Positions 39,881 to 64,000 of a stretch of 64,000 nucleotides of DNA are shown here, one piece after another; the first letter of the stretch is position 1, and every line of letters starts with the position of its first letter. The notes under the pieces were generated by a model. The model worked only from the letters and a program-made list of their open reading frames with translations. It was not told where the DNA came from and made no database searches. The DNA lies in the NCBI GenBank assembly GCA_001179505.1, contig CDMY01000349.1, positions 43,634-107,633 on the forward strand, given 5' to 3'. Made by a program: the position numbers and the translations under genes. This stretch comes from Vitrella brassicaformis CCMP3155 (lineage: Eukaryota > Protista > Chromerida).

Positions 39881-42800
39881 CGTGTGTGTGTGTGTGTGGT
39901 TTACCCATGGGGATTGTGCAGAGAGGCCGTCCCATACGAGCTCGCCGCCATTGGCGCCACCCCCGTTGTTGTTGCCCAGCAGAAGCTGCGAGTGCATGCT
40001 GATCGCACGGCTGGGCGACGTGACCATGGTCCGGTGGTGGTTGAAACTTCCCGGCGCCACCAGCCCCGCAGGCGACCTCTTGACCACATGCTGCTCGGTC
40101 TTGCGGCCAGAACCGCTGCCGCCGATCTCCTCCGGCTCGTGGTGCGCGTCGACCTCATCGGCACCGCTGCTCGACGCCGCCTTCTGCTGCTGCTGTGTCT
40201 GAGTGGTTGTGTTGAGGGCGTCTGGCCCAGCACCACTAGCAACGGCCATCATTTTGACGTATGAGGTGAGCAGCCTGGCTCGGTCGGTGTCGTTGGATGT
40301 GGCGGGTGAGGGCATGAGGGAGCTGCTGGCGTCGTTGCTGGCGGCGTCCAGGATGTTGACCGATATGTGGGAGGCCTTGTGGGTGAGGTCCAACGCCACA
40401 GGGGTTGTCTGCACAGAGAGGGAGGGAGGGAGGGAGGGAGAGGGAGAGAAAGGTGTGTGTGTGGGTGGGTGGGTGGGTGTTCGAGTGCGGCGTCGCACTT
40501 CTGGTTCTAAAGAGTTGGCCGAGTTGGCGTAGTTGCGCGAGATGGCCCACACGACGGCGTCGTGCAGAGAAAGGAAGCACCGCTCCGCAGGCACATACTG
40601 GTAAAACTCTGATCGACCGATGATCGAGACACACACACAGGCAGTGCAGCGCAGACACACACAGAAGGAAGGGGTGTGGACGGTCGGTCGGTCGTGACTC
40701 ACTGGCTTTGTCGAGGAAATCCCGCATGGGGCCTTTCCAGTTGGCGAACATCAGAGCCACCTGCACCCACTCACCACCACCACCAGCCCATCGCATGCAG
40801 CACACACCCAGGACACACACAGAGAGTGACCACAAAAACAGGTGGTTGGGCCGGGGGGGGGGGGGGGGACCNNNNNNNNNNNNNNNNNNNNNNNNNNNNN
40901 NNNNNNNNNNNNNNNNNNNNNNNNNNNNNNNNNNNNNNNNNNNNNNNNNNNNNNNNNNNNNNNNNNNNNNNNNNNNNNNNNNNNNNNNNNNNNNNNNNNN
41001 NNNNNNNNNNNNNNNNNNNNNNNNNNNNNNNNNNNNNNNNNNNNNNNNNNNNNNNNNNNNNNNNNNNNNNNNNNNNNNNNNNNNNNNNNNNNNNNNNNNN
41101 NNNNNNNNNNNNNNNNNNNNNNNNNNNNNNNNNNNNNNNNNNNNNNNNNNNNNNNNNNNNNNNNNNNNNNNGGGGGGGGGGGGGGGGGGGGGGACCAGTG
41201 GTAGCTACGTACCTGTCGGTCGTTGAAGAAGTTGACGACCCTCTGCAGCATCCGCACCGACGTGGCATCCACGTCGTTGATGCTAGACGCGTCAACGATG
41301 AAGGCATGCACGCCCTGACCATCATCATCCATCATGTCATGCACACAAACAAACAGCCACACAGCCACACGGCACCAATCGACATAATGCGCTGGGCGCC
41401 TCTCCGCAGGTGTGGTGTGTCTTTCTTTTGCAGCGAGCAGGTTTGTTTGTTTACGTCCAGTTTGATAGACTTGATCTTGGCCTCAAAATAAGCGGCGTTA
41501 GAGAAGTTGAGCGAGGCGTCGAATCGGAAAATCTTCACACCCGGCGGCTCGACCGCAGTGGGGAAACGCTTCAAATTCCGATACACTGTCGTCCCTGCAC
41601 ACGCACACGCACATCCATCCCTCTGTATGTGTGTGTGTGTGCGTTGTTTGTCCTCCTTCACCCACACAACACACACAACACACACACACGCACCTGGCAG
41701 CTGCCCGAGGAGAGCGGTGAATGGCCGTGAGGTCTTCTTGAGCAGCCACAGGAGCGAGAGGATGACCGACATCATGACCCCCTCCATGGCACCCAGCCCC
41801 ACCGTCACGCAGAAGCACACCAGCCACAGGGCGAAGTCGGGGCCGCCCAGACGGAACAGACGATAGGCCTCCTGCACCACACACACACACACACACACAC
41901 GGACAGACAGACACACCTGAGTGGAGTGAGTGGATGGTATTTGTGTGTGTATGGGTGTAGGGGTGTGTTTAGCCACCCTGAAGTCTATCATGCCGTAGAC
42001 ACCGAAGAGGACGACAGATGCGAGGATGGTGTAGGGGAGGTAGTACAGCAGCGGCGTGATGGCGAACAGCGTCAGACACACCACAGCTACCGACCTGTGG
42101 CGGTGGGCACCACCACACACACACACACACGAGCATGTGTGTGTGTGTGTGTGTGTGGTGGGGGCATGGGGGGATGGGGGGATAAGCCTTACGGGACGTT
42201 GTGCAGGATGGTTTTCCCTCCGATTGAGTAAATGACCGACGTGCGTGACAGCGACGTGGCGCATGGGAAGCACTGGAAGAACGACCCAAGCGTGTTGGCC
42301 ACACTCAGAGCCACCAACTCCTGCTCGCTGTCAATCTGGCGACCATCCATCCATCCCACCACAACAACCGTCGTACGCAACGACACACACACACACACAC
42401 ACCTCCCCTCCCTGATGTGTCGCTGACCTTGTAGTCTAGCCGTGCCGCAACGGTCTTTGAGATGCTCATGTGGATGACGTAGAACATGACAGCGATGGGG
42501 ATGGCCTCCTGCAACAGCGGCACGAAATAGTTGGTGCTGCCCGTGGGGTTGAACGACGGCAACGTGGCGGGCGGGAAGCCTATCAGTCACCACACACACA
42601 CACACACAGACACACACACACACACACAGAGCGAGGGAGAGTTCGATGCATGTGTGTGGTGTGTGTGAGGGGGGAGGGGGCTGATATGTGTGTGTGTGTG
42701 TGTGCCTAGGCTTATTTGCCTTGTGGAATCTCTTTGAGGGTTTTGACGTTGAACGGCGGCAGGTCGAGTCGGAAGAGGTAGGCCAGGAGGGTGAACAGAA

Positions 42801-50675: not shown

Positions 50676-51561
50676 GGAGAGGGAGAGAGAGAGGCGTGTT
50701 CACACCCACACAGCCACAGCCATCCATCCATCGAGGCCATTTACTTTTGGAACTGCATGGTGTGCGAGGGGTCAGTGCTGAGGATGGCGTCCACCAGCGG
50801 GACAAACAGGGATGCGGGGGCCTTGAAGCACAGCGACAGCAGCTGGTGGAAATACACGCGGGGCGTCCCGCTCTCGCCTACAAGACAAGCATGCAGCGTC
50901 AGCCATCCCATGCACACACGCTGGCCCAGCTATCACTGGTCTGGATGGATGGATGGATGGATGAATGAATGTGGGCGCACCCTCGTCTGGCTTGCCCATG
51001 AGGTGTTTCTTGACATCATTCTGCCGCGCGAGAGTCGTCAGCGTGATGGGCAGCGCCTGGCAACGGAGGAACACCTGACCAACCGCACAGCACACCACAC
51101 CACACCATACCACCCGGCAGTCCATCGCTCTTTCTCCTCTGCGTATGGCGCAGGTCTGCAGCCACCCCAGCCACCGACCTGTTTGAAGCTGAGGTCCTGC
51201 CCGGTGTGGTCGGCATCATGATATCTGGTGGATCCCTCCCGCCCCGACGAGAGGATCTGTGCGCTCAGTCTTTTGAACTCCTCGGCGTGAATCGGCAGAG
51301 AGTAGGGCTGACGCGCCTGCGTCTCCAGCTGACGCTCCTGGATACAACGACACATCGGGAGAGTGATCTCACTTCACACACAGACAGACAGACACAGACA
51401 GGCAGATGAGACTTTCTTACCAGCTCTGTGACGCTCAGGTGGGACTTGACGACTCTCAGGGCATCTCTGGCCTGCTGCACTCCCTCCTTGACAGTGTCCT
51501 TGACCTTATCGGCGCCCTCCTTGACCTTCTTGAGGAAGCTGCCCAGCGCCCCAGACGTCAT
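47834..51561 (-). CDS. Long coiled-coil protein related to an uncharacterised plant family (At5g13560/At2g37370-like)
   Basis: ATG 51561. YHDADHTGQDLSFKQ|VFLRCQAL resembles the plant motif [23 protein letters not shown] (recalled, not searched). Long heptad exons and a Pro/acidic tail follow. Confidence 0.7.
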
Positions 51562-51622: not shown

Positions 51623-54600
51623 ATGGCTGGGGGTCTGGGGGCTCCCAGATCCGCACATCCAAGGAAGATGATGGCCATCCTTCTGACGGCTCTGCTTGCA
51701 AGCGGAGCTTTCATCGCCTCTGCGCGATGTAACGACGAATCCGTGTGCACAATGCCAGAATCATTTGCTTCAGATGCTTCTCATGCATTGCTTTGTGTCA
51801 GCCCCCCCTGCGACGAATGAGGCGGGCTTCAGGGCACTGTTCGGCACCTCCGACTTCGTATCTCCTACGTGTGCCTCGACGATAACCGTCACGAGTGCTG
51901 CCGATTCAGGAGTCGGCACGCTGAGAGAGGCGCTTGGCATGTTGGAAGCCCAAGAGCCGGACACAGAAGAGACCACCCGCTCTATTCGCGTCAGCTCAAG
52001 CGTCACTCAAATCAGCCTCCAAAGCACTCTCCTCTTCAAGGGGCGCAACGTCTATTTATTCCCTCAAGACCTCAACAATGCAGACTCTTTCCCTCTTATT
52101 AAGGCCCCAGACAAAGCTGACTTGCTCACGACCGAGGGAACGAGTAACTTCACTATTGCTGGCGTTCGCTTCACGAACAAAGGCGCGGACCACGACTACA
52201 CTACATATTCCATGATTCTTCTCAAACCGGCGAGCAATATCAAGACAAGTGTGGCCTTCTATCGAGTGTCCGTTGGAGTGCAGCAATCCGGACACCATCA
52301 GCTTTAGAGCCGTAGACATTGACACTGGGGGATCAGAAAAGGATACCATTGATGTCTCGTTCTAAGAGTCGGCTTTCCACGGAAACGAAGGCATCGTAAT
52401 AGACCGCGCCTATCGCGGTGCTACCTATCCGCCACGCAGAAGAGTCGCTCTGAAGAATACCTCGATTTACGGAAATCGAATCTATGACGGAGAGGGGAGC
52501 TGCACCTCTTGCTATTACGCTCTTATGGATATCTCTCAATGCAGCGCACTTATTGATCATACAATCTTCGACAGCAACGAGGCTGTAGGAACCTCAAGCC
52601 AATCCGGGGATGCGCCAATTCTGAAGCTTGGGGACCGGAAGTCCGAATATGTGATCATTTGCCAATCGACTTTCCAAAACAACCACAATAGAGAAGCCTA
52701 TTACTGGGCGAGTCATCACATCGTCGAAATTAGAGCGTATGAGGCGAGTGTAATAGTCGAAAAGAGCATATTTACCGGCAACAGTCGGCAAAGTGATACT
52801 CGTAGCACATCTAACGACGGGGCTGCACTAAAAGTCTCATACCCATCCGGTAATGAAGATGCATGCACTGGAAAATTAAAGCTATCTCATATGGATGTGT
52901 ATCCTATAGGTGATGTCGTGATCAGCGATTGCATCTTCGAGGACAACAAACCAGGCGCTATCTACATCGACAGCATGTACGACCAAGGAGGCTCGGTGAC
53001 TGTCAGAAGATCAACATTTCGTCGGAATACGGCGCTAAGTGGTGATAGTGTTGATGAAGCAAACGACCGCTCTGCGATACGAGTCAAGGGCTATCGTCAC
53101 GTTGAGATCGTGGACAACTGTTTCGTGGACAACGAGCTCACAACAATGATACACGCGATCGACCGGGATGAAGACCGCCTCGATACGGAGACATTCACTC
53201 TCAGTGGCAACGGGCTTGTACCAAGATCAGTGGGTGGTGGATCAGACGTGTTGTTCAAGTTTGAGAATCCCAATCAATACTATGCGGGGATCATTATCGG
53301 GACAAACACGCAACGGTGCGCCAATGTGTGTGGAAACGGCCTCGTGATGCCGGCAATCGAGACATGCGATGATGTCGGAACACCCGACGTCTCTGCGACA
53401 CCAGAAAGCGGCGACGGCTGTAGTGCGTCCTGCACGATTGAGCAGGGGTGGGAGTGTGAAAATCAGGAAACTCACGGTGACGAGGGACACGGACCCTCTG
53501 TCTGCTCACGTGGGTGAAGACAGAAAAGAGAGACATAGGACATAGTGCTATGTCATGTTTGCCTGTTGGCCTCACGTGTATTTGCAGCTCGGCCGATGCT
53601 CCCCACCCTTACCACTAAAACCCCCAACAGCCGCATATTGCCTTTCGCAGTGGAAATCACCCTCTCCGAGCCAGCCAAATCCGGCTCTTTTGAGGTCGCT
53701 GATATTGCGCTATCTGGTGCTGCTGAGGCGTCTGTTACATCCCTACAAACCATCTCCAACCAGCAGTTCACTGCCAATGTGCAGCCTACAAGCGGTGGCA
53801 GCATAAGCATTCAGCTGGTCGCCGGTACAGTGGAGCTGCACAATGTGCCTGGCTACTTCAACCAAGATTCCAACCTTTTAACCGTAACCATCGGTGAGTA
53901 GGTGGACACACAATGCAACGAATGTACATATTCTTGTAATCTTTCAGATGCAATCAGACCGACTCCTGTCTTGACAGCAACAACAGCTTCTCCTGATGGC
54001 ATCGTGAAGAGCGACCCTTTCAGCGTGACAGTGACATTTGATGAGCCAATATTGGCGTCGACACTGACTGCGAGTGACTTTGCCACTACGAACGCTTCTG
54101 TTGTCAGCATTAGCGAGCTGGGGGCCTCGAGCGACACTTTCAGCATTGGTGTAGCGCCAGATGCAGCGGGAGGGATACAAGTGCAGCTTCCGGAAGCCAG
54201 AACGGAGGACCTTGTCGGAAACCCAAACATGGCTTCAAACACCTTGACAGTCACATACGGTGAGCACACAAAAATTGCTTCCTTTCGCTTCTTCATGCAT
54301 GCCTCTGCTGCTGCATTGCTCCAGAGATGCCACCAACCACAATCCCGCCATCGACCGTCAAGCCTCCCACCTCGCCACCGGGTTCGCCGCGGCATTGACT
54401 GGCATCAAAAGTGGCGAGATGGCCCTCTGCATCTGTATGTGTCAGACTCCGGTGGAGGGGATGTGCCACCAGACGGCGAAGATGGTGGCCCTGGCAATGG
54501 TGGCCCTAGTAATGGTGGCCCTAGTAATAATGGCCCTGGTAATGGTGGCCCCGGCGACTGTTATCGCCCTGATTGCCCTCCTTGCCTCTGCGAGGACGCT

Positions 54601-55628
54601 TTGGATAACATGTTTCCTCCCTGGCAAGAGGCAGACATTTCGTCTGGCGGAGCCGAGGGCGACCCGGCGGAAGGCTGCAGCACCAGACTTGGCACCGGTG
54701 GTCAGCATGGATTGCAGGAATCCGTGGGCAGGCATTTTCTTTCTGTGTCTATGTCTCGCACATGAGTTCGGAGTGTGTGTCTCATGCAGGGTTCCGTATT
54801 TCATGCAAGGACTCGCAGCACATGAAGACCATCAGTCTATCCGAGACCACTTTTGTCACCGTCCTCGAGGGCTCGACCAATGACGATACGCTCAGAGGCA
54901 ATTCGAAAGACAACACTCTCATTGGCGGAGACGGCGACGACAGCCTAGCTGGGCGCGGAGGATACGACCAACTGATTGGTGGCCGAGGATCCGACACATT
55001 CGTCATCACAGATGAGCCGTGCGACGTGACGATCCTTGACTTCGAGACCGGCGCATCCCACGACAAGCTCAACCTGCGCATATTTCCCTCCATCACAAGT
55101 ATGGAGGCCCTCGAGCAGCGGATGACGAGTGGCAGCGTGATAATCGACGTCGATGACACGCACAGGGTGACGATAGCGAACGTCATTCCAGAAGAGGTCC
55201 TCGATCCCACATACTTTCTCCTCAGCGAGGGAGCGGACGAGGCTAGAAACAATGGCGATGACGAATGCGGCTGGTTCACCTACAGCCGGCCCGAATGCGT
55301 CGACACCATTCTGTCCATCGTGCTTGGAATCGTCGGTGTTGCCGGCCTTGGGGTCGGCGCCTGGCAATTCTCACACAACTTTTTGAAGCGGGGCCAGAAG
55401 CCGACCGGGGCGGAGGAAAAGGGCGAAAAGGAGATGGACCCCCGCAAGCGATCGGTATCTGACACTCGAGACAGCCGCAAAAAGAGTTACCTCCAGAGCA
55501 AGTCCGAGAGGCGGGTGCCGCGCAGCGAACACCCCAACTTTGTCCAGACCCTGCAGGAGGACAAACCATCAGGAGATGAGAGCGGGACGTGCGGAAGGGT
55601 GGAGGATGGTGCTGTCAGCCGCGTCTGA
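51623..55628 (+). CDS. Bacterial-type adhesin-like type-I membrane protein: signal peptide, TVTSAADSGxGTLREA motif, beta-helix, Myxococcus Cys-rich (DUF4215-like) repeat, two bacterial Ig-like domains, RTX nonapeptides, TM helix; possibly disrupted
   Basis: MMAILLTALLASGAFIA; ITVTSAADSGVGTLREAL; repeated FxxN strands; CGNGLV...ETCDD...GDGCSASCTIEQGWEC; PFSVTVTFDEPI...EDLVGNPN; five GGxGxDxL-type repeats at 54865-55007; TM ILSIVLGIVGVAGLGVGAW. Downstream introns are phase-compatible. There is a frame break near 52275 and a TAA at 52363. Confidence 0.85.
54484..54558 (+). repeat. Coding 15-bp tandem repeat x5 (GGP[G/S]N linker)
   Basis: ggtggccctggcaat / ggtggccctagtaat x2 / aatggccctggtaat / ggtggccccggcgac. 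Confidence 0.95.
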
Positions 55629-55714: not shown

Positions 55715-57076
55715 ATGTCGGCCATCAGACGACTTTTGTATCATGTGTCAAGTCTGCTGCAGAAAGTGAATCTCTCTTGCCAATCAATCGACGAGTCACG
55801 CTGTGTGCCTCCTGTGTCGGCAAGCCGGTCCTTTGTGCTGTGTGTCCCTCCTTTCCTCCGGCTGGAGGATCTGGAGGAGTCATGCCGGCGACTTAAAGCA
55901 GAGTCGCCCACACTGCCAGACAAGCAGACGTGCGAGCAGGGAGATTTTCCTGCCTCCCATTTATTCTGCCCTCTCTGGTTGTGTGTCAGGCGTCGACACT
56001 CGACAGCAGTGCAGAGTGTTGTAGCCGGGCGGCACGCCCCTGTCGCCCCATCACCCGATGCCATTCGATGGGCAAGCGACGGACCATCGGCCAGAGAGAC
56101 GCCCCAACGCACGCATTGCACACATATGTGTCTTGTCCGTCCGGCAGGTACGCCAACCTCACGGGCTTCGACATGGAGCTCAAGGAGAACTTCGAGATCG
56201 TTTGCTTCGTCGCTTGGCCGTGCGGAAACTTGTGTGAGCGGGACTTCTCCGCCAAATGTCCGCTCGGCTGGCGGCACCTGAGTGACGGCACGTGTCTCGC
56301 CCCCCTCTCTGTCTACCTGCCGGCCCGCGGCTTCGCAGCCTGTCCAACCCGCCGAAGATTTAACGACCTGCCGCCCGCCAGCGTGGCGAGCGCGGCGTAT
56401 GAGTGTGAGCTGGACTTCTCTTGTCTCTCACGCAAGACGTGCACTCGCGACTACACCAGCAGGCACGTAGCGACACTGAATATAATGGCTAAGAAGAAAG
56501 CTATCATAATGTGTGTGCCTTCTGTGTGTGCAATTTCAGATGTCCGATCGACTGGATGGACGCGGGCGTGACAGCTGGCGGCGTGACCTGTTTGCCGCGC
56601 GCTGTCAGCAACAAAGGCACCTGCACCAACATCACCTTGGCACACGACGCATCCGATGACGTAAGGAAGTCACAAACCACATTTGCCGCATACACACACC
56701 CATGGTCCCATACGTATGTGCGTGTGTTGTGTTGTGTGTGCACTATAAAGGCCAAACGCAAGAAGGCCGCCGAATGCGACGCCGACTGGCCCTGGTCAGC
56801 CAGCCAGCCAGCCGGGCAGATGGACAGATGGGAAGGAGTGCACTAAAGTGCCTGCGTGTCTCTCCCTGTCTGTCTGTGTGTATTTGTGTCTATCTCGTCA
56901 GTGTGGGTGAGTACCGGTGGCTCAAGCAGCATCACCACGCCGCTGCAGCCACACACGCCCCCACTCGCTGAGCGAGCGGCATTCATTCATCAAGAGAACA
57001 AACAAGAGGACAGAAAGTGTGCGTGCATGACTGCACCGACAGGGAGATGGATGACCACCAGACCCGAATGCATTAA
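55715..57076 (+). CDS. CPW-WPC domain protein (5' end uncertain)
   Basis: VCFVAWPC, CERDFSAKCPLGW, CTRDYTS|RCPIDW, ECDADWPC are repeats typical of the apicomplexan/chromerid CPW-WPC family. Confidence 0.85.
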
Positions 57077-61700: not shown

Positions 61701-64000
61701 TGACTCCCTGAGGTCGTCAGCTTCATCGTTTTCGTCTTCACTGTCGCTCAACTCCTCGTTGTCAGCGGAAGACGACTCAATGGCCGGAAGCGGGCGGTCG
61801 CCGAACAGCTGTCCTTGTTCCTCTCGTGTCTTCCTGTCAATGAACTCCTCCAGAAGCTGAGCGATCGGTGGAATCAACTGAGACAGGCAGAGACACACGA
61901 ACAAACAGGGCGGTGTGTGTGTGTGTGTAAGTGTAAGTGGGCGTCCATCAATTCTTGCTGACTTGGGAAACGCCGAAGAGGGTCAGCACGGTAAGTACGA
62001 AGACCACGGGCAGGAATAAAGCGAAGTACTGCTGCTCCTCGAATGCGTCGAGCCCGACGCAGTTGAGGCGGAAAGCGATAGGGGTGAAGAGGAAGATTTC
62101 GCACGCGCCAAAGAATATCTGGACGTTCTTGGGCAGCCGCAGGTTGAAAGAGTTGATGACGGCAACCTCTTGCAGGAAAACAAAGATGAGCAGTAAGCCG
62201 TTGCCCTTCTTGAAGCGCGGTGAAGTGGCCACCCACATAAAGAAGAATGTGAAGACCGGCATGCTGAATATGACAAGGAAGGCCGGACCGGCGAGGTTCG
62301 TGGAGCCGCAGTCGAAGCATTTGCCGCTGTGCCTGTAGGGCGCAAAATGGCCTTGGCGGCACTTGCCACACACAAGGTCCTCCCGATTGTCTTCGCATGC
62401 ATTGGCTACACAAAGAGACACAGACAACAGCGAGACAATACATAATTAATAATTAATCGGGTTGAAGCCTTACACTGATTTCCTGGGCATGCTTCTCTGG
62501 GAATGCACATGTAAAGTTCGGCTTGCTGGAAAGGCTTGCTTCGGTCGAACTCGCGAGCCCACCACCCCGGCTCAATCAAAGGGAAATCATCCCCTTCTGA
62601 AAGGCAAACACCGGACAACCACATGACGAATGGCAAATTAAATATCCAAACGAACGGGCGCGTACGGTTGCATATCGTGCGTTTCTGGCAGGGTAGGCAC
62701 ACGTCCTTGACAAAAAGGCCCGTCTCTTCTTCTGCCGTTTGATTGACAGACATGGCGGTGCCGTCGGTGCCGTTCGCAGTGTCGCTGACGCTGACGTTGC
62801 TCACGGCTATTGCCGGCCTTTTGTAGGTGCGATAGAAGCCCGAAGAGCAGATGCACGCCGTGATGGACGAGGCACCGATCAAAGAGGTGGTTTCGCCGGC
62901 AGGACAGCGCGTGCATTCGGTGCTGCCGGGGATGCTCGCGTACGCCCCGAAGTCGCATTTTTGGCAGCTGGTCAGCGCGACGAACTCCGTTTCGTTGATG
63001 GCGCTAAAGCTCCCCACCGGGCACTCGATGCATCCATCGGGGCTGTCTCCTGGATTGAAGGTGCCGTTTTGGCAGAACACACAGCCCTGCTGGCCCTCGA
63101 GCGGTTGTTCCATGCCTACGAACATGAGACAGGCAAGGGGGCGGGAGGAGCAAAAACAGGCGCCCATGTTGCAGTGTTCACGGGAGAAAGGGGAAAGACG
63201 AGCCTACCTCTGGGACATAATCGGCACTGCGTCGCATTTGTCTGGTCCGTGATCCTGTGAGCTGAACAATTTCGGCACTCGATCCCTGAAGCAATGTAAG
63301 CAATATGAGGCTAGTTAATGTCTCCGGCTGCCATGAGCCACCACGCAGTGCCACTCAGTGAGAAATCGGTTGAGTGCGCGAGTGCGTGTGTGAGTGAGAG
63401 GCTGACTGATTCACCCCCCCACCTGTGTTGAACGTCCCAGGTGGGCATCCAACAAAGCTGAACGAGACACAAGCAGGACATCACTCACCAGCTGTCTCAC
63501 TGACTCAGACAGAGAAACAGACAAACAGACAGACCGACAGGCCCGTCCTTGTCTGTTGGTCTGCCTGTCTTCTGTCTGCCTGTCTGCCTGTGGGCCTATC
63601 TATCTGTCTGTCTGTCTGTCCGTCTGTCCGTCTGTGTTTGTGTAAAGGTCATATGTACGCACCGTGATTGGAAGCTGGGCATGAGGATCTGAATAGGCAC
63701 TTCGGCAACGGCCTCGGGTGCCACCGCCTTCAGATCGCTGAAGCTGGTGGTCCCTGGGAACTGCTGGAGCAGGACAAAGGCTCCGTTCAGTCGATTATCC
63801 TTGTCGAACCGCAGGTTGGCGTCCCAGAAGGTGTCGAAGCTGTTACGCCAGAGCTCCAGCTTGATGGCCGCCCGGTTCGTGTCCATGTCGGGACTCCACT
63901 CGGTCAGAAACGAAATGGCAATCGCCAGCAGATGCACTGATGAATGAAGGTGCAAACACGCACAAATACACATGTCATCCCTTCGCCCGCTGCCCGCTGG
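58789..64000 (-). CDS. Class-C-GPCR-like receptor (periplasmic-binding/Venus-flytrap tail + ephrin-like Cys-rich repeats + multi-TM); 5' end outside the window
   Basis: FDTFWDANLRFDKDN...LLQQ...AVAPEAVA...MPSFQSR|FVGCPPGTF; CPVGSFS, CDFGAY, CPAGETT, CICSSGFY, PGWW, C..NREDLVCGKC; then about seven hydrophobic helices with YPYILC, FYGALMDKY, WWAVV and PWRR motifs. Confidence 0.8.

What the first reader, a model, noticed from the sequence alone, without database searches (positions are those of the whole stretch)
51623..55628. Bacterial RTX/Ig/beta-helix adhesin modules rebuilt as a spliced eukaryotic type-I membrane protein
Seen: an N-terminal TVTSAADSGxGTLREA motif, a long beta-helix-like region, a myxobacterial-type Cys-rich repeat, two bacterial Ig-like domains, a GGPxN linker, five RTX Ca-binding nonapeptides, then a TM helix and a charged cytoplasmic tail. 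Established: RTX repeats and Big domains characterise type-I-secreted bacterial adhesins such as LapA and SiiE. Here secretion is via an ER signal, the protein is anchored by a TM helix, and several introns fall at domain boundaries. Exons are visibly more AT-rich and introns lack the local microsatellites. Inference: a horizontally acquired, exon-shuffled Ca-dependent adhesin or receptor for substrate, coral or bacterial contact.
Basis: partly seen in the sequence, partly recalled or inferred. Interest (0 to 1): 0.82.

Follow-up and report, generated by a model that had tools for sequence, protein, structure and literature searches.

The report
Broken alga surface-protein gene, bacterial-type modules
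This is a transcribed, correctly spliced gene of the coral-associated alga Vitrella brassicaformis, one of five copies encoding a membrane-anchored surface protein partly built from bacterial-type adhesin modules, but this copy carries a frameshift and a stop codon and is probably a young pseudogene.

Summary
RNA-derived contigs confirm six GT..AG introns, and the spliced frame from 52366 to the stop at 55626-55628 is open for 950 codons.

All seven introns are phase 1. They bracket the two Ig-like exons (306 and 312 nt) and the linker exons exactly.

The RTX repeats and the myxobacterial Cys-rich repeat pass curated cut-offs. The Ig-like exons match Big_12 repeat units of giant bacterial proteins. 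The head folds as a right-handed beta-helix but has no sequence relatives outside Vitrella.

A 2-nt deletion sits at 52274/52275, and TAA (52363-52365) replaces a Trp codon conserved in paralogs. DNA contigs and unspliced RNA contigs show both lesions. The signal peptide and first ~190 residues are therefore not in frame with the rest.

The organism is Vitrella brassicaformis CCMP3155, which has five paralogs. Four carry frameshifts in the head; only copy D (CEM18028.1) looks intact.

Contamination is excluded. Bacterial origin is well supported by distribution for the RTX block, likely for the Ig and Cys modules, and untested for the head.

The scan's first readers noted RTX-module surface proteins on other pieces of this genome; I did not check those notes.

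The parts
51623..51728 (+). Exon 1: start codon(s) and signal-peptide-like segment. ATG at 51623; paralogs start at the position of the second Met pair, 51668.
   Evidence: hydrophobic core, KD 2.28. Paralog B has the same short exon and a phase-1 intron. Splicing of this exon is not confirmed by RNA contigs.
51729..51801 (+). Intron 1 (73 nt, GT..AG, phase 1). Predicted, not confirmed.
   Evidence: Reading. The frame joins to PPATNEAGF as in paralog B.
51802..52849 (+). Exon 2: N-terminal two thirds of the beta-helix head, including TVTSAADSGVGTLREA. It carries both disabling lesions.
   Evidence: The DNA contig 51803-53160 is identical in runs X1 and X3. RNA contigs 51821-52354 and 52127-52401 are unspliced.
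52274..52275 (+). Lesion 1: 2-nt deletion relative to paralogs B and E (GTT--GGAGTGC against ATGGAGGAGTGC). It shifts the frame.
52363..52365 (+). Lesion 2: TAA where paralogs B, D and E have TGG (Trp in DVSFWESAFHGNEG).
52850..52909 (+). Intron 2 (60 nt, phase 1).
   Evidence: Spliced RNA contig in run X9; boundaries.
52910..53509 (+). Exon 3: C-terminal part of the beta-helix plus the Cys-rich acidic repeat (about 53326-53457).
   Evidence: TIGR02232 at 39 bits against 20.8. Beta_helix at 20.3 bits, below the cut-off.
53510..53587 (+). Intron 3 (78 nt, phase 1).
53588..53893 (+). Exon 4 (306 nt, symmetric 1-1): Ig-like domain 1.
   Evidence: Same exon size in paralogs B and C.
53894..53947 (+). 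Intron 4 (54 nt, phase 1).
   Evidence: Spliced contigs in X9 and X12. The MMETSP ORF P0009 is identical across the junction.
53948..54259 (+). Exon 5 (312 nt, 1-1): Ig-like domain 2 (Big_12/Big_5 type).
   Evidence: BLASTP 33-40% identity, E 1e-12, end to end with Pseudovibrio Big_12 repeat units. Big_5 at 20.3 bits, below 23.6.
54260..54324 (+). Intron 5 (65 nt, phase 1).
54325..54381 (+). Exon 6 (57 nt, 1-1): Pro/Thr-rich linker.
54382..54445 (+). Intron 6 (64 nt, phase 1).
54446..54700 (+). Exon 7 (255 nt, 1-1): GGPxN linker (15-nt tandem repeat at 54482-54551) followed by a Cys-rich acidic segment.
54701..54789 (+). Intron 7 (89 nt, phase 1).
   Evidence: The X9 contig ends at 54701 and its loose end matches 54790 onward. 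Also.
54790..55628 (+). Exon 8. Five RTX nonapeptides (54870-55004); a post-RTX block like bacterial RTX C-termini (to about 55235); the CGWF..PEC juxtamembrane loop; TM helix 55305-55370; cytoplasmic tail with RKRSVSDTRDSR; stop at 55626-55628.

Best explanation
The locus is copy A of a five-member gene family of Vitrella brassicaformis.

The family's architecture, as annotated in one piece only for copy D, is a type-I surface protein:
- an ER signal peptide (copy D has FG-GAP repeats at this end instead);
- a right-handed beta-helix head of about 500 residues, with the fold of polysaccharide lyases and epimerases;
- one myxobacterial-type Cys-rich repeat;
- two bacterial-type (Big_12-like) Ig domains;
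- a Pro/Thr-rich and Gly/Pro/Asn-rich linker, predicted to be disordered;
- a five-repeat RTX beta-roll with the following block that forms the extreme C-terminus of bacterial RTX proteins;
- a disulfide-capable juxtamembrane loop, one TM helix and a conserved basic, Ser-rich tail.

Inferred mechanism: the head binds or processes a glycan on substrate, host or bacteria. The Ig domains and linker form a stalk. The RTX roll folds in millimolar Ca2+ as a membrane-proximal pedestal. The RKRSxSDTRxSR tail is a phospho-regulated or sorting motif.

The RTX, Ig and Cys modules are of bacterial type. They sit on symmetric phase-1 exons, which points to assembly by exon shuffling after transfer.

Copy A is transcribed and correctly spliced. 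A 2-nt deletion and a TGG>TAA change in exon 2 separate the signal peptide and the first ~190 residues from the remaining 950-codon ORF. Copy A is therefore most likely a young, still-expressed pseudogene.
For: Shown:
- Six introns are spliced in RNA contigs, and the 950-codon ORF is open.
- All introns are phase 1, and the exons of 306, 312, 57 and 255 nt are symmetric. Paralogs show the same pattern.
- RTX and TIGR02232 score above curated cut-offs.
- Ig exon 2 matches Big_12 repeat units at E 1e-12. A search with the paralog's Ig part gave 2139 hits, led by giant proteins with 8-36 matched stretches. The sampled hits carry Big_12 and are mostly bacterial.
- The RTX block aligns to the ends of bacterial RTX proteins, for example P0086 residues 404-508 of 533, 46% identity.
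- Fold models: beta-helix head (pTM 0.70; best PDB matches are PL6 lyases and the AlgE4 A-module); tandem Ig, a disordered linker, and strands with 9-residue periodicity.
- The lesions appear in the three-frame translation, in tblastn against paralog B, and in the DNA alignment with B and E. They lie inside a single 1358-nt DNA contig in two studies and in unspliced RNA contigs of two runs.
- Paralog loci lie in GCA_001179505.1.
- dN/dS between copies is 0.14-0.44.
- Tail motifs are invariant in all five copies.

Inferred: the function, Ca2+ dependence, HGT origin and pseudogene status.
Against: - The 950 codons downstream of the lesions contain no further stop, and all introns still splice. 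The lesions are therefore recent, or the downstream part is still used.
- A GT..AG pair at 52272-52368 (97 nt) would remove both lesions in frame.
- Four of the five copies have a frameshift, and every one lies upstream of the Ig exons. This could mean something other than random decay.
- The head has no bacterial sequence relatives.
- Big_12 arrays also occur in Mesostigma viride models.
- No rooted domain tree was built.
- Exon 1 splicing is not seen in the RNA contigs.
Confidence: 0.6

Rival explanations
1. Copy A is functional. A 97-nt phase-0 intron (52272-52368, GT..AG) or translational recoding removes both lesions, giving an intact type-I protein that lacks about one beta-helix rung.
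For: - GT at 52272 and AG at 52367-52368 bracket both lesions, and the join would read ...AFYRVS|SAFHGNEG in frame.
- The downstream ORF is open for 950 codons and dN/dS is about 0.2.
Against: - RNA contigs of two runs (X9 51821-52354; X12 52127-52401) read through unspliced, at the same depth as spliced exons, and no joint is reported there.
- The skipped stretch is conserved coding sequence in B, D and E.
- With several GT and AG dinucleotides nearby, an in-frame pair is expected by chance.
Confidence: 0.13
2. The locus yields separate products. One is a short secreted N-terminal fragment (signal peptide plus about 190 aa, ending at TAG 52305). The other, alone or in addition, is an N-terminally truncated membrane protein started at an internal AUG such as 52525.
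For: - Both ORFs exist on one transcript.
- In all four broken copies the Ig-RTX-TM-tail part stays open and conserved.
Against: - The downstream ORF has no signal peptide, so its ectodomain would not be translocated in the type-I orientation.
- Reinitiation after a 225-codon upstream ORF is inefficient in eukaryotes (general knowledge).
Confidence: 0.12
3. Bacterial contamination, or a chimeric mis-assembly of paralogs.
For: - The modules are bacterial in type.
- Short-k DNA and RNA contigs break at 51796-51825, 53137-53160 and 54845-55331, where paralogs share k-mers.
Against: - There are seven spliceosomal introns, six seen spliced.
- DNA contigs run into the flanks at both ends.
- A CPW_WPC gene lies 300 nt downstream.
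- The switch from B-like to C-like sequence at about 53775 lies inside one 1709-nt DNA contig in two studies.
- Both lesions lie inside one 1358-nt contig.
Confidence: 0.02
4. The modules are old eukaryotic inheritance, not horizontal acquisitions from bacteria.
For: - Big_12-type arrays occur in two Mesostigma viride gene models of 3101 and 7523 aa.
- An Atlas feature search with paralog B's head ranked first a eukaryotic (Chlorophyta) cluster of hypothetical proteins, a lead only.
- No donor lineage was identified.
Against: - Outside Vitrella, the named hits to the RTX block are all bacterial and the unnamed ones are metagenomic or unlabelled.
- The sampled Big_12 hits lie on Mb-size contigs or carry bacterial names.
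- No Chromera or other alveolate hit appeared in any search.
- The Mesostigma models could not be checked for contamination.
Confidence: 0.15

Closest known systems
Bacterial type-I-secreted RTX adhesins (LapA, SiiE, MpIBP, FrhA class)
   Same: Tandem bacterial Ig-like domains are followed by RTX nonapeptides and the block that ends bacterial RTX proteins. Both are Ca2+-binding surface proteins.
   Different: Here an ER-type signal peptide replaces T1SS export. There are only two Ig units rather than tens. The RTX block is internal and followed by a TM helix and cytoplasmic tail. The gene has seven spliceosomal introns, and this copy is broken.
AlgE-type mannuronan C-5 epimerases (beta-helix A-module plus RTX R-module) and PL6 alginate lyases
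   Same: A right-handed beta-helix head is combined with an RTX module. The AlgE4 and AlgE6 A-modules and PL6 lyases are among the best fold matches.
   Different: Identity in the fold alignment is only about 10%, and no catalytic residues were assessed. AlgE proteins have no Ig domains, no Cys repeat and no TM anchor.
Mosaic extracellular proteins of apicomplexans and chromerids (Woo et al. 2015, PMC4501334, Appendix 5 and works cited there)
   Same: Lineage-specific surface proteins are built by combining adhesion modules. Chromerids are reported to have many such architectures.
   Different: That survey lists vWA, TSP1, EGF, Sushi, LCCL, OWP, MacPerf and CAST-type proteins. It does not mention RTX, Big-type Ig or beta-helix proteins.
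Myxobacterial Cys-rich acidic repeat proteins (TIGR02232 / DUF4215)
   Same: One repeat scores 39 bits on TIGR02232. The pattern is CANVCGNG...ETCDD...GDGCS..C..E.GWEC.
   Different: There is a single copy rather than arrays. The Pfam DUF4215 score (15 bits) is below the cut-off of 27.

Membership tests
RTX calcium-binding repeat (PF00353 HemolysinCabind) | Tandem GGxGxDxUx nonapeptides scoring above the Pfam gathering cut-off. | tested here: met
   31.0-31.2 bits against 23. Five contiguous nonapeptides at exon-8 residues 27-71.
Bacterial T1SS substrates (RTX proteins in the strict sense) | RTX block plus an uncleaved secretion signal at the extreme C-terminus, exported by an ABC/MFP/TolC system. 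| tested here: not met
   The block homologous to bacterial C-termini is followed by about 130 more residues, including a TM helix and tail. The gene is in a eukaryote and has an N-terminal signal-like exon.
Big_12 / Big_5 bacterial Ig-like domains (PF19078 / PF13205) | Score above the Pfam gathering cut-off. | tested here: not met
   Big_5 scores 20.3 against 23.6 for Ig2, with nothing for Ig1. Big_12 was not reported at E<=5.
Big_12 / Big_5 bacterial Ig-like domains (PF19078 / PF13205) | Significant end-to-end similarity to bona fide repeat units, and an Ig-like beta-sandwich fold. | tested here: met
   Ig2 matches Pseudovibrio Big_12 units at 33-40% identity, E 1e-12. Ig1 matches at E 2e-4. 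The paralog model shows two beta-sandwiches, and the top PDB matches are FdeC, InvD, InvE and invasin.
Cys-rich acidic repeat (TIGR02232 myxo_disulf_rpt; PF13948 DUF4215) | Score above the curated cut-off. | tested here: met
   TIGR02232 scores 39 against 20.8. The Pfam DUF4215 model is not met (15 against 27).
Right-handed parallel beta-helix (PF13229; pectin-lyase-like fold) | Pfam cut-off, or a fold match to solved beta-helices. | tested here: inconclusive
   The window copy scores 20.3-21.7 against 25.9. Paralog P0001 scores 34.4. The AF2 model of copy D's head (pTM 0.70, pLDDT 63) matches PL6, AlgE4 and GH87 at Foldseek probability 1.0, TM 0.4-0.59 normalised by target. The window copy itself was not folded.
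Type-I single-pass membrane protein | One ORF with an N-terminal signal peptide, a luminal ectodomain, a single TM helix and a cytoplasmic C-terminus. | tested here: not met
   The signal-like exon and TM helix are present. The ORF is interrupted by a frameshift at 52274/52275 and TAA at 52363-52365, and RNA is unspliced there. The only copy annotated as a single model is D (P0280), and its N-terminus carries FG-GAP repeats rather than a signal exon.
Processed or unitary pseudogene | Disabling lesions relative to intact relatives, with loss of constraint. | tested here: inconclusive
   Two lesions are shown. Loss of constraint is not shown: pairwise dN/dS is 0.14-0.44, no further stops occur in 950 codons, and the gene is transcribed and spliced.

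The most novel reading that the evidence does not exclude
The five copies may form a diversifying surface-protein system rather than a decaying one.
- The copies are mosaics. A is B-like in its 5' half and 85-95% C-like in its 3' 1.8 kb, introns included.
- Four of the five carry one private frameshift each, always upstream of the Ig exons, yet all are transcribed and show purifying selection.
- The broken copies could serve as gene-conversion donors, or as switchable (contingency-type) variants of a Ca2+-dependent adhesin.
- The adhesin itself would have been assembled in a protist by phase-1 exon shuffling of bacterial RTX-adhesin modules.
Probability: 0.08. Interest if true: 0.8.

Novelty: new variant of a known kind. 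Interest (0 to 1): 0.45.

Why it matters
If the family reading holds, it is a clean case outside animals of extracellular modules sitting on symmetric phase-1 exons. Here the modules are of bacterial adhesin type. They include an RTX beta-roll, with the block that ends bacterial T1SS substrates, placed in front of a eukaryotic TM anchor. That bears on how free-living relatives of apicomplexans built surface-recognition proteins in the coral holobiont.

For this particular locus the practical message is a caution. The copy is interrupted, so it should not be annotated or expressed as an intact adhesin. Copy D (CEM18028.1) is the one to study.

Tried and rejected
- NCBIfam and Pfam gave nothing for the N-terminal GTLREA segment (51804-52304) or for Ig1. 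I found no support for membership in any curated family for these parts.
- The word search with copy D's head (residues 105-720) found no relatives outside Vitrella in the 696-2215 aa range. Shorter or longer relatives were not covered.
- No annotated protein of the window's own locus turned up in the length ranges searched, 210-670 and 368-1170 aa. I could not tell whether the locus is annotated.
- The Mesostigma model P0128 is not on record in the contig collection, so contamination could not be checked.
- Literature searches for RTX or HemolysinCabind in Vitrella or algae found nothing specific.
- I had taken P0008 for an environmental relative. It clusters with Vitrella copy E.
- MMETSP Transcript_49306 (ORFs P0001 and P0009) is a chimera of copies C, B and A, so I used it only where it is identical to A.
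- I rejected programmed frameshifting. The shifts differ in direction between copies and share no motif.
- No rooted domain phylogeny was built. Repeats and the lack of taxon labels for most hits made one uninformative with the calls available.
Full report
**What is in the sequence**

The plus strand of 51623-55628 holds a chain of ORF pieces in changing frames. Their translations show, in order:
- a hydrophobic N-terminal exon;
- TVTSAADSGVGTLREA;
- a long stretch with beta-helix-like periodicity;
- a Cys-rich acidic repeat;
- two segments of about 100 residues each;
- a Pro/Thr-rich and then a GGPxN-type linker, encoded by a 15-nt tandem repeat;
- five contiguous RTX nonapeptides, a hydrophobic helix and a charged tail.

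The region has lower GC than its surroundings. Exons are 0.55 with GC3 0.61, against 0.58-0.65 and GC3 0.65-0.80 for long ORFs elsewhere in the window. Its introns are short, 54-89 nt, and lack the long (TG)n or (CAGA)n tracts common around it.

**Gene model and expression**

Public runs hold the stretch. Two of them, X9 and X12, contain spliced contigs and so hold RNA. They confirm six GT..AG introns:
- 52850-52909
- 53510-53587
- 53894-53947
- 54260-54324
- 54382-54445
- 54701-54789

With these removed, the frame from 52366 to the stop at 55626-55628 is open for 950 codons. An independent MMETSP ORF, P0009, is identical to this model across introns 4 to 7.

Intron 1 (51729-51801) is predicted only. 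Its position and phase match paralog B.

All seven introns are phase 1. The exons for Ig1 (306 nt), Ig2 (312 nt), the PT linker (57 nt) and the GGPxN/Cys segment (255 nt) are symmetric 1-1 exons. With uniform phases the chance is about 0.0014, but the background phase distribution of this genome was not measured.

- Exon 2 does not read through. The frame carrying GTLREA ends at TAG 52305. The continuation is in the +1 frame and is itself cut by TAA at 52363-52365.
- Against paralog B, the frame switch falls between 52274 and 52276.
- In a DNA alignment with B and E, copy A lacks 2 nt (GTT--GGAGTGC) and has TAA where they have TGG. Copy D also has Trp at that position in the protein alignment.
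- Both lesions lie inside one 1358-nt DNA contig that is identical in runs of two studies.
- They also lie inside RNA contigs that cross the area unspliced (X9 51821-52354; X12 52127-52401), at a depth like that of the spliced exons.
- A GT..AG pair at 52272-52368 would remove both lesions in frame. No joint is reported there.

The signal-peptide exon and the first ~190 residues are therefore not in frame with the other 950 codons. I read this as a young pseudogene that is still expressed. A rescued or truncated product is not excluded.

**Organism and family**

Word searches returned proteins of Vitrella brassicaformis CCMP3155. Their loci come from assembly GCA_001179505.1. Including the window's copy A, there are five copies.

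| Copy | Locus | Annotated models | State |
|---|---|---|---|
| A | window 51623-55628 | none found | 2-nt deletion and TAA in exon 2 |
| B | CDMY01001045 (L001) | P0003 + P0007, split | frameshift at the end of exon 3, also visible in MMETSP ORFs |
| C | CDMY01000499 (L002) | a 232-aa model + P0002, split | frameshift in exon 2 |
| D | CDMY01000499, convergent with C (L003) | P0280, 1266 aa, CEM18028.1, one model | no break seen; N-terminus continuous with FG-GAP repeats, not a signal exon |
| E | CDMY01000217 (L004) | P0284 | frameshift in exon 2 and a shortened Ig1 |

Intron positions around the Ig exons and the phase-1 rule hold across the copies: B 7/7, E 5/5, C 4/5.

Pairwise dN/dS is 0.14-0.44, with dS 0.3-2.7.

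Copy A is a mosaic. It is B-like (76-80%, locally 90%) in its 5' half. It is C-like (85-95%, intron 7 included) from about 53775 onward, and that switch lies inside a single DNA contig.

**What the modules are**

- RTX: PF00353 scores 31 bits against a cut-off of 23.
- RTX plus the next ~70 residues: these align to the very ends of bacterial RTX proteins. An example is P0086 residues 404-508 of 533, 46% identity, E 1e-14. Outside Vitrella, every named hit is bacterial and the rest are metagenomic or unlabelled.
- Cys repeat: TIGR02232 scores 39 bits against 20.8.
- Ig-like exons: Pfam scores are below cut-off. Ig2 aligns end to end with Big_12 units of a Pseudovibrio protein at E 1e-12. An exhaustive search with the paralog's Ig part gave 2139 hits, led by giant proteins with 8-36 matched stretches. 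The sampled hits are bacterial, except two Mesostigma viride models that I could not vet.
- AF2 model of copy C's Ig-to-RTX part: two beta-sandwiches, a disordered linker, and strands every nine residues. The top PDB matches are FdeC, InvD, InvE and invasin.
- Head: no sequence relatives outside Vitrella. An AF2 model of copy D's head (pTM 0.70) is a right-handed beta-helix. Its nearest solved folds are PL6 alginate lyases, the AlgE4/AlgE6 A-modules and GH87, at about 10% identity.
- C-terminal region: the juxtamembrane CGxF.Y..PEC loop, the TM helix and the tail motif RKRSxSDTRxSR...ERxV are invariant in all five copies.

**Contamination and mis-assembly**

- The introns, the spliced RNA and the DNA contigs that run into both flanks argue against contamination.
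- A CPW_WPC-domain gene lies 300 nt downstream (57 bits).
- Short-k contigs break at three places where paralogs share k-mers. Only long reads would close these formally.

**Function (inference)**

For the family I propose a Ca2+-stabilised surface receptor or adhesin:
- the beta-helix head binds or processes a polysaccharide;
- the Ig domains and the linker (possibly glycosylated) act as a stalk;
- the RTX roll acts as a membrane-proximal pedestal that folds at millimolar Ca2+;
- the conserved basic, Ser-rich tail acts as a phosphorylation or sorting motif.

None of this was tested. For copy A the most likely state is non-functional.

**Comparison and novelty**

The nearest systems are bacterial T1SS RTX adhesins and AlgE-type beta-helix-plus-RTX enzymes. 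Copy A fails the defining T1SS feature, because the RTX block is not C-terminal, and it is a spliced eukaryotic gene.

The general idea of mosaic surface proteins in chromerids is published (PMC4501334). This family is not mentioned in that paper's Appendix 5.

First-reader notes of this scan list RTX-module surface proteins on other pieces of this genome. Some may be the paralogs described here. I did not check them.

Noticed in passing
window 55930-56568 (+): The ORF right after the gene carries a CPW_WPC domain (PF09717, 57 bits). This family is typical of apicomplexans and chromerids, and it is useful evidence of genuine host context.
   Followed up: partly
window 62409-63167 (-): A Cys-rich ORF with Ephrin_rec_like repeats (PF07699, 37 bits). 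It may be another modular surface protein.
   Followed up: partly
window 51268-51561 (-): A head-to-head neighbour encodes a small Lys/Glu-rich ORF (MTSGALGSFLKKVKEGADKVKD...). It starts about 60-100 nt from the gene's ATG, has high contig depth in run X12, and a contig loose end at 51420 may mark a splice there. It has no Pfam match.
   Followed up: partly
L001 9855-9880; L002 7385-7392; L004 5333-5336: Paralogs B, C and E each carry a private frameshift. With copy A's lesions, all five lie upstream of the Ig exons, while the Ig-RTX-TM-tail parts stay open. With five lesions this placement is only suggestive (about 0.06 by length).
   Followed up: partly
L003 4532-6555: Copy D's reading frame runs without an intron from FG-GAP_2 repeats into the TNEAGFRALFG start of the head, and it continues upstream of the annotated ATG. 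The upstream 368-aa FG-GAP model and P0280 may be a single larger gene.
   Followed up: partly
window 53775-55500 against L002: Copy A is 85-95% identical to copy C over its 3' 1.8 kb, intron 7 included, but only 50-70% identical in the 5' half, where it resembles B and E. This is a gene-conversion or recombination mosaic.
   Followed up: yes
proteins P0001 and P0009 (MMETSP Transcript_49306): The two ORFs of one MMETSP transcript switch from copy C to copy B to copy A. This is most likely an assembly chimera among paralogs, so it should be used with care.
   Followed up: partly
proteins P0128 and P0129 (Mesostigma viride, EukProt): Gene models of 3101 and 7523 aa carrying Big_12-type Ig arrays are among the best matches to the Vitrella Ig pair. 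This is either contamination or another alga with bacterial-type giant adhesins.
   Followed up: partly
runs X11 and X13-X15: Marine sediment metagenomes of 2025 hold 8-46% of the sampled words of this stretch. This suggests Vitrella-like DNA in sediments.
   Followed up: no
window about 40850-41180: A run of N (an assembly gap) shows up as X-runs in the ORF translations.
   Followed up: no
L002 5459-5596 (-): A short tblastn match (65% identity over 46 aa) to the juxtamembrane and TM part of exon 8. It may be a gene fragment or a further relative.
   Followed up: no
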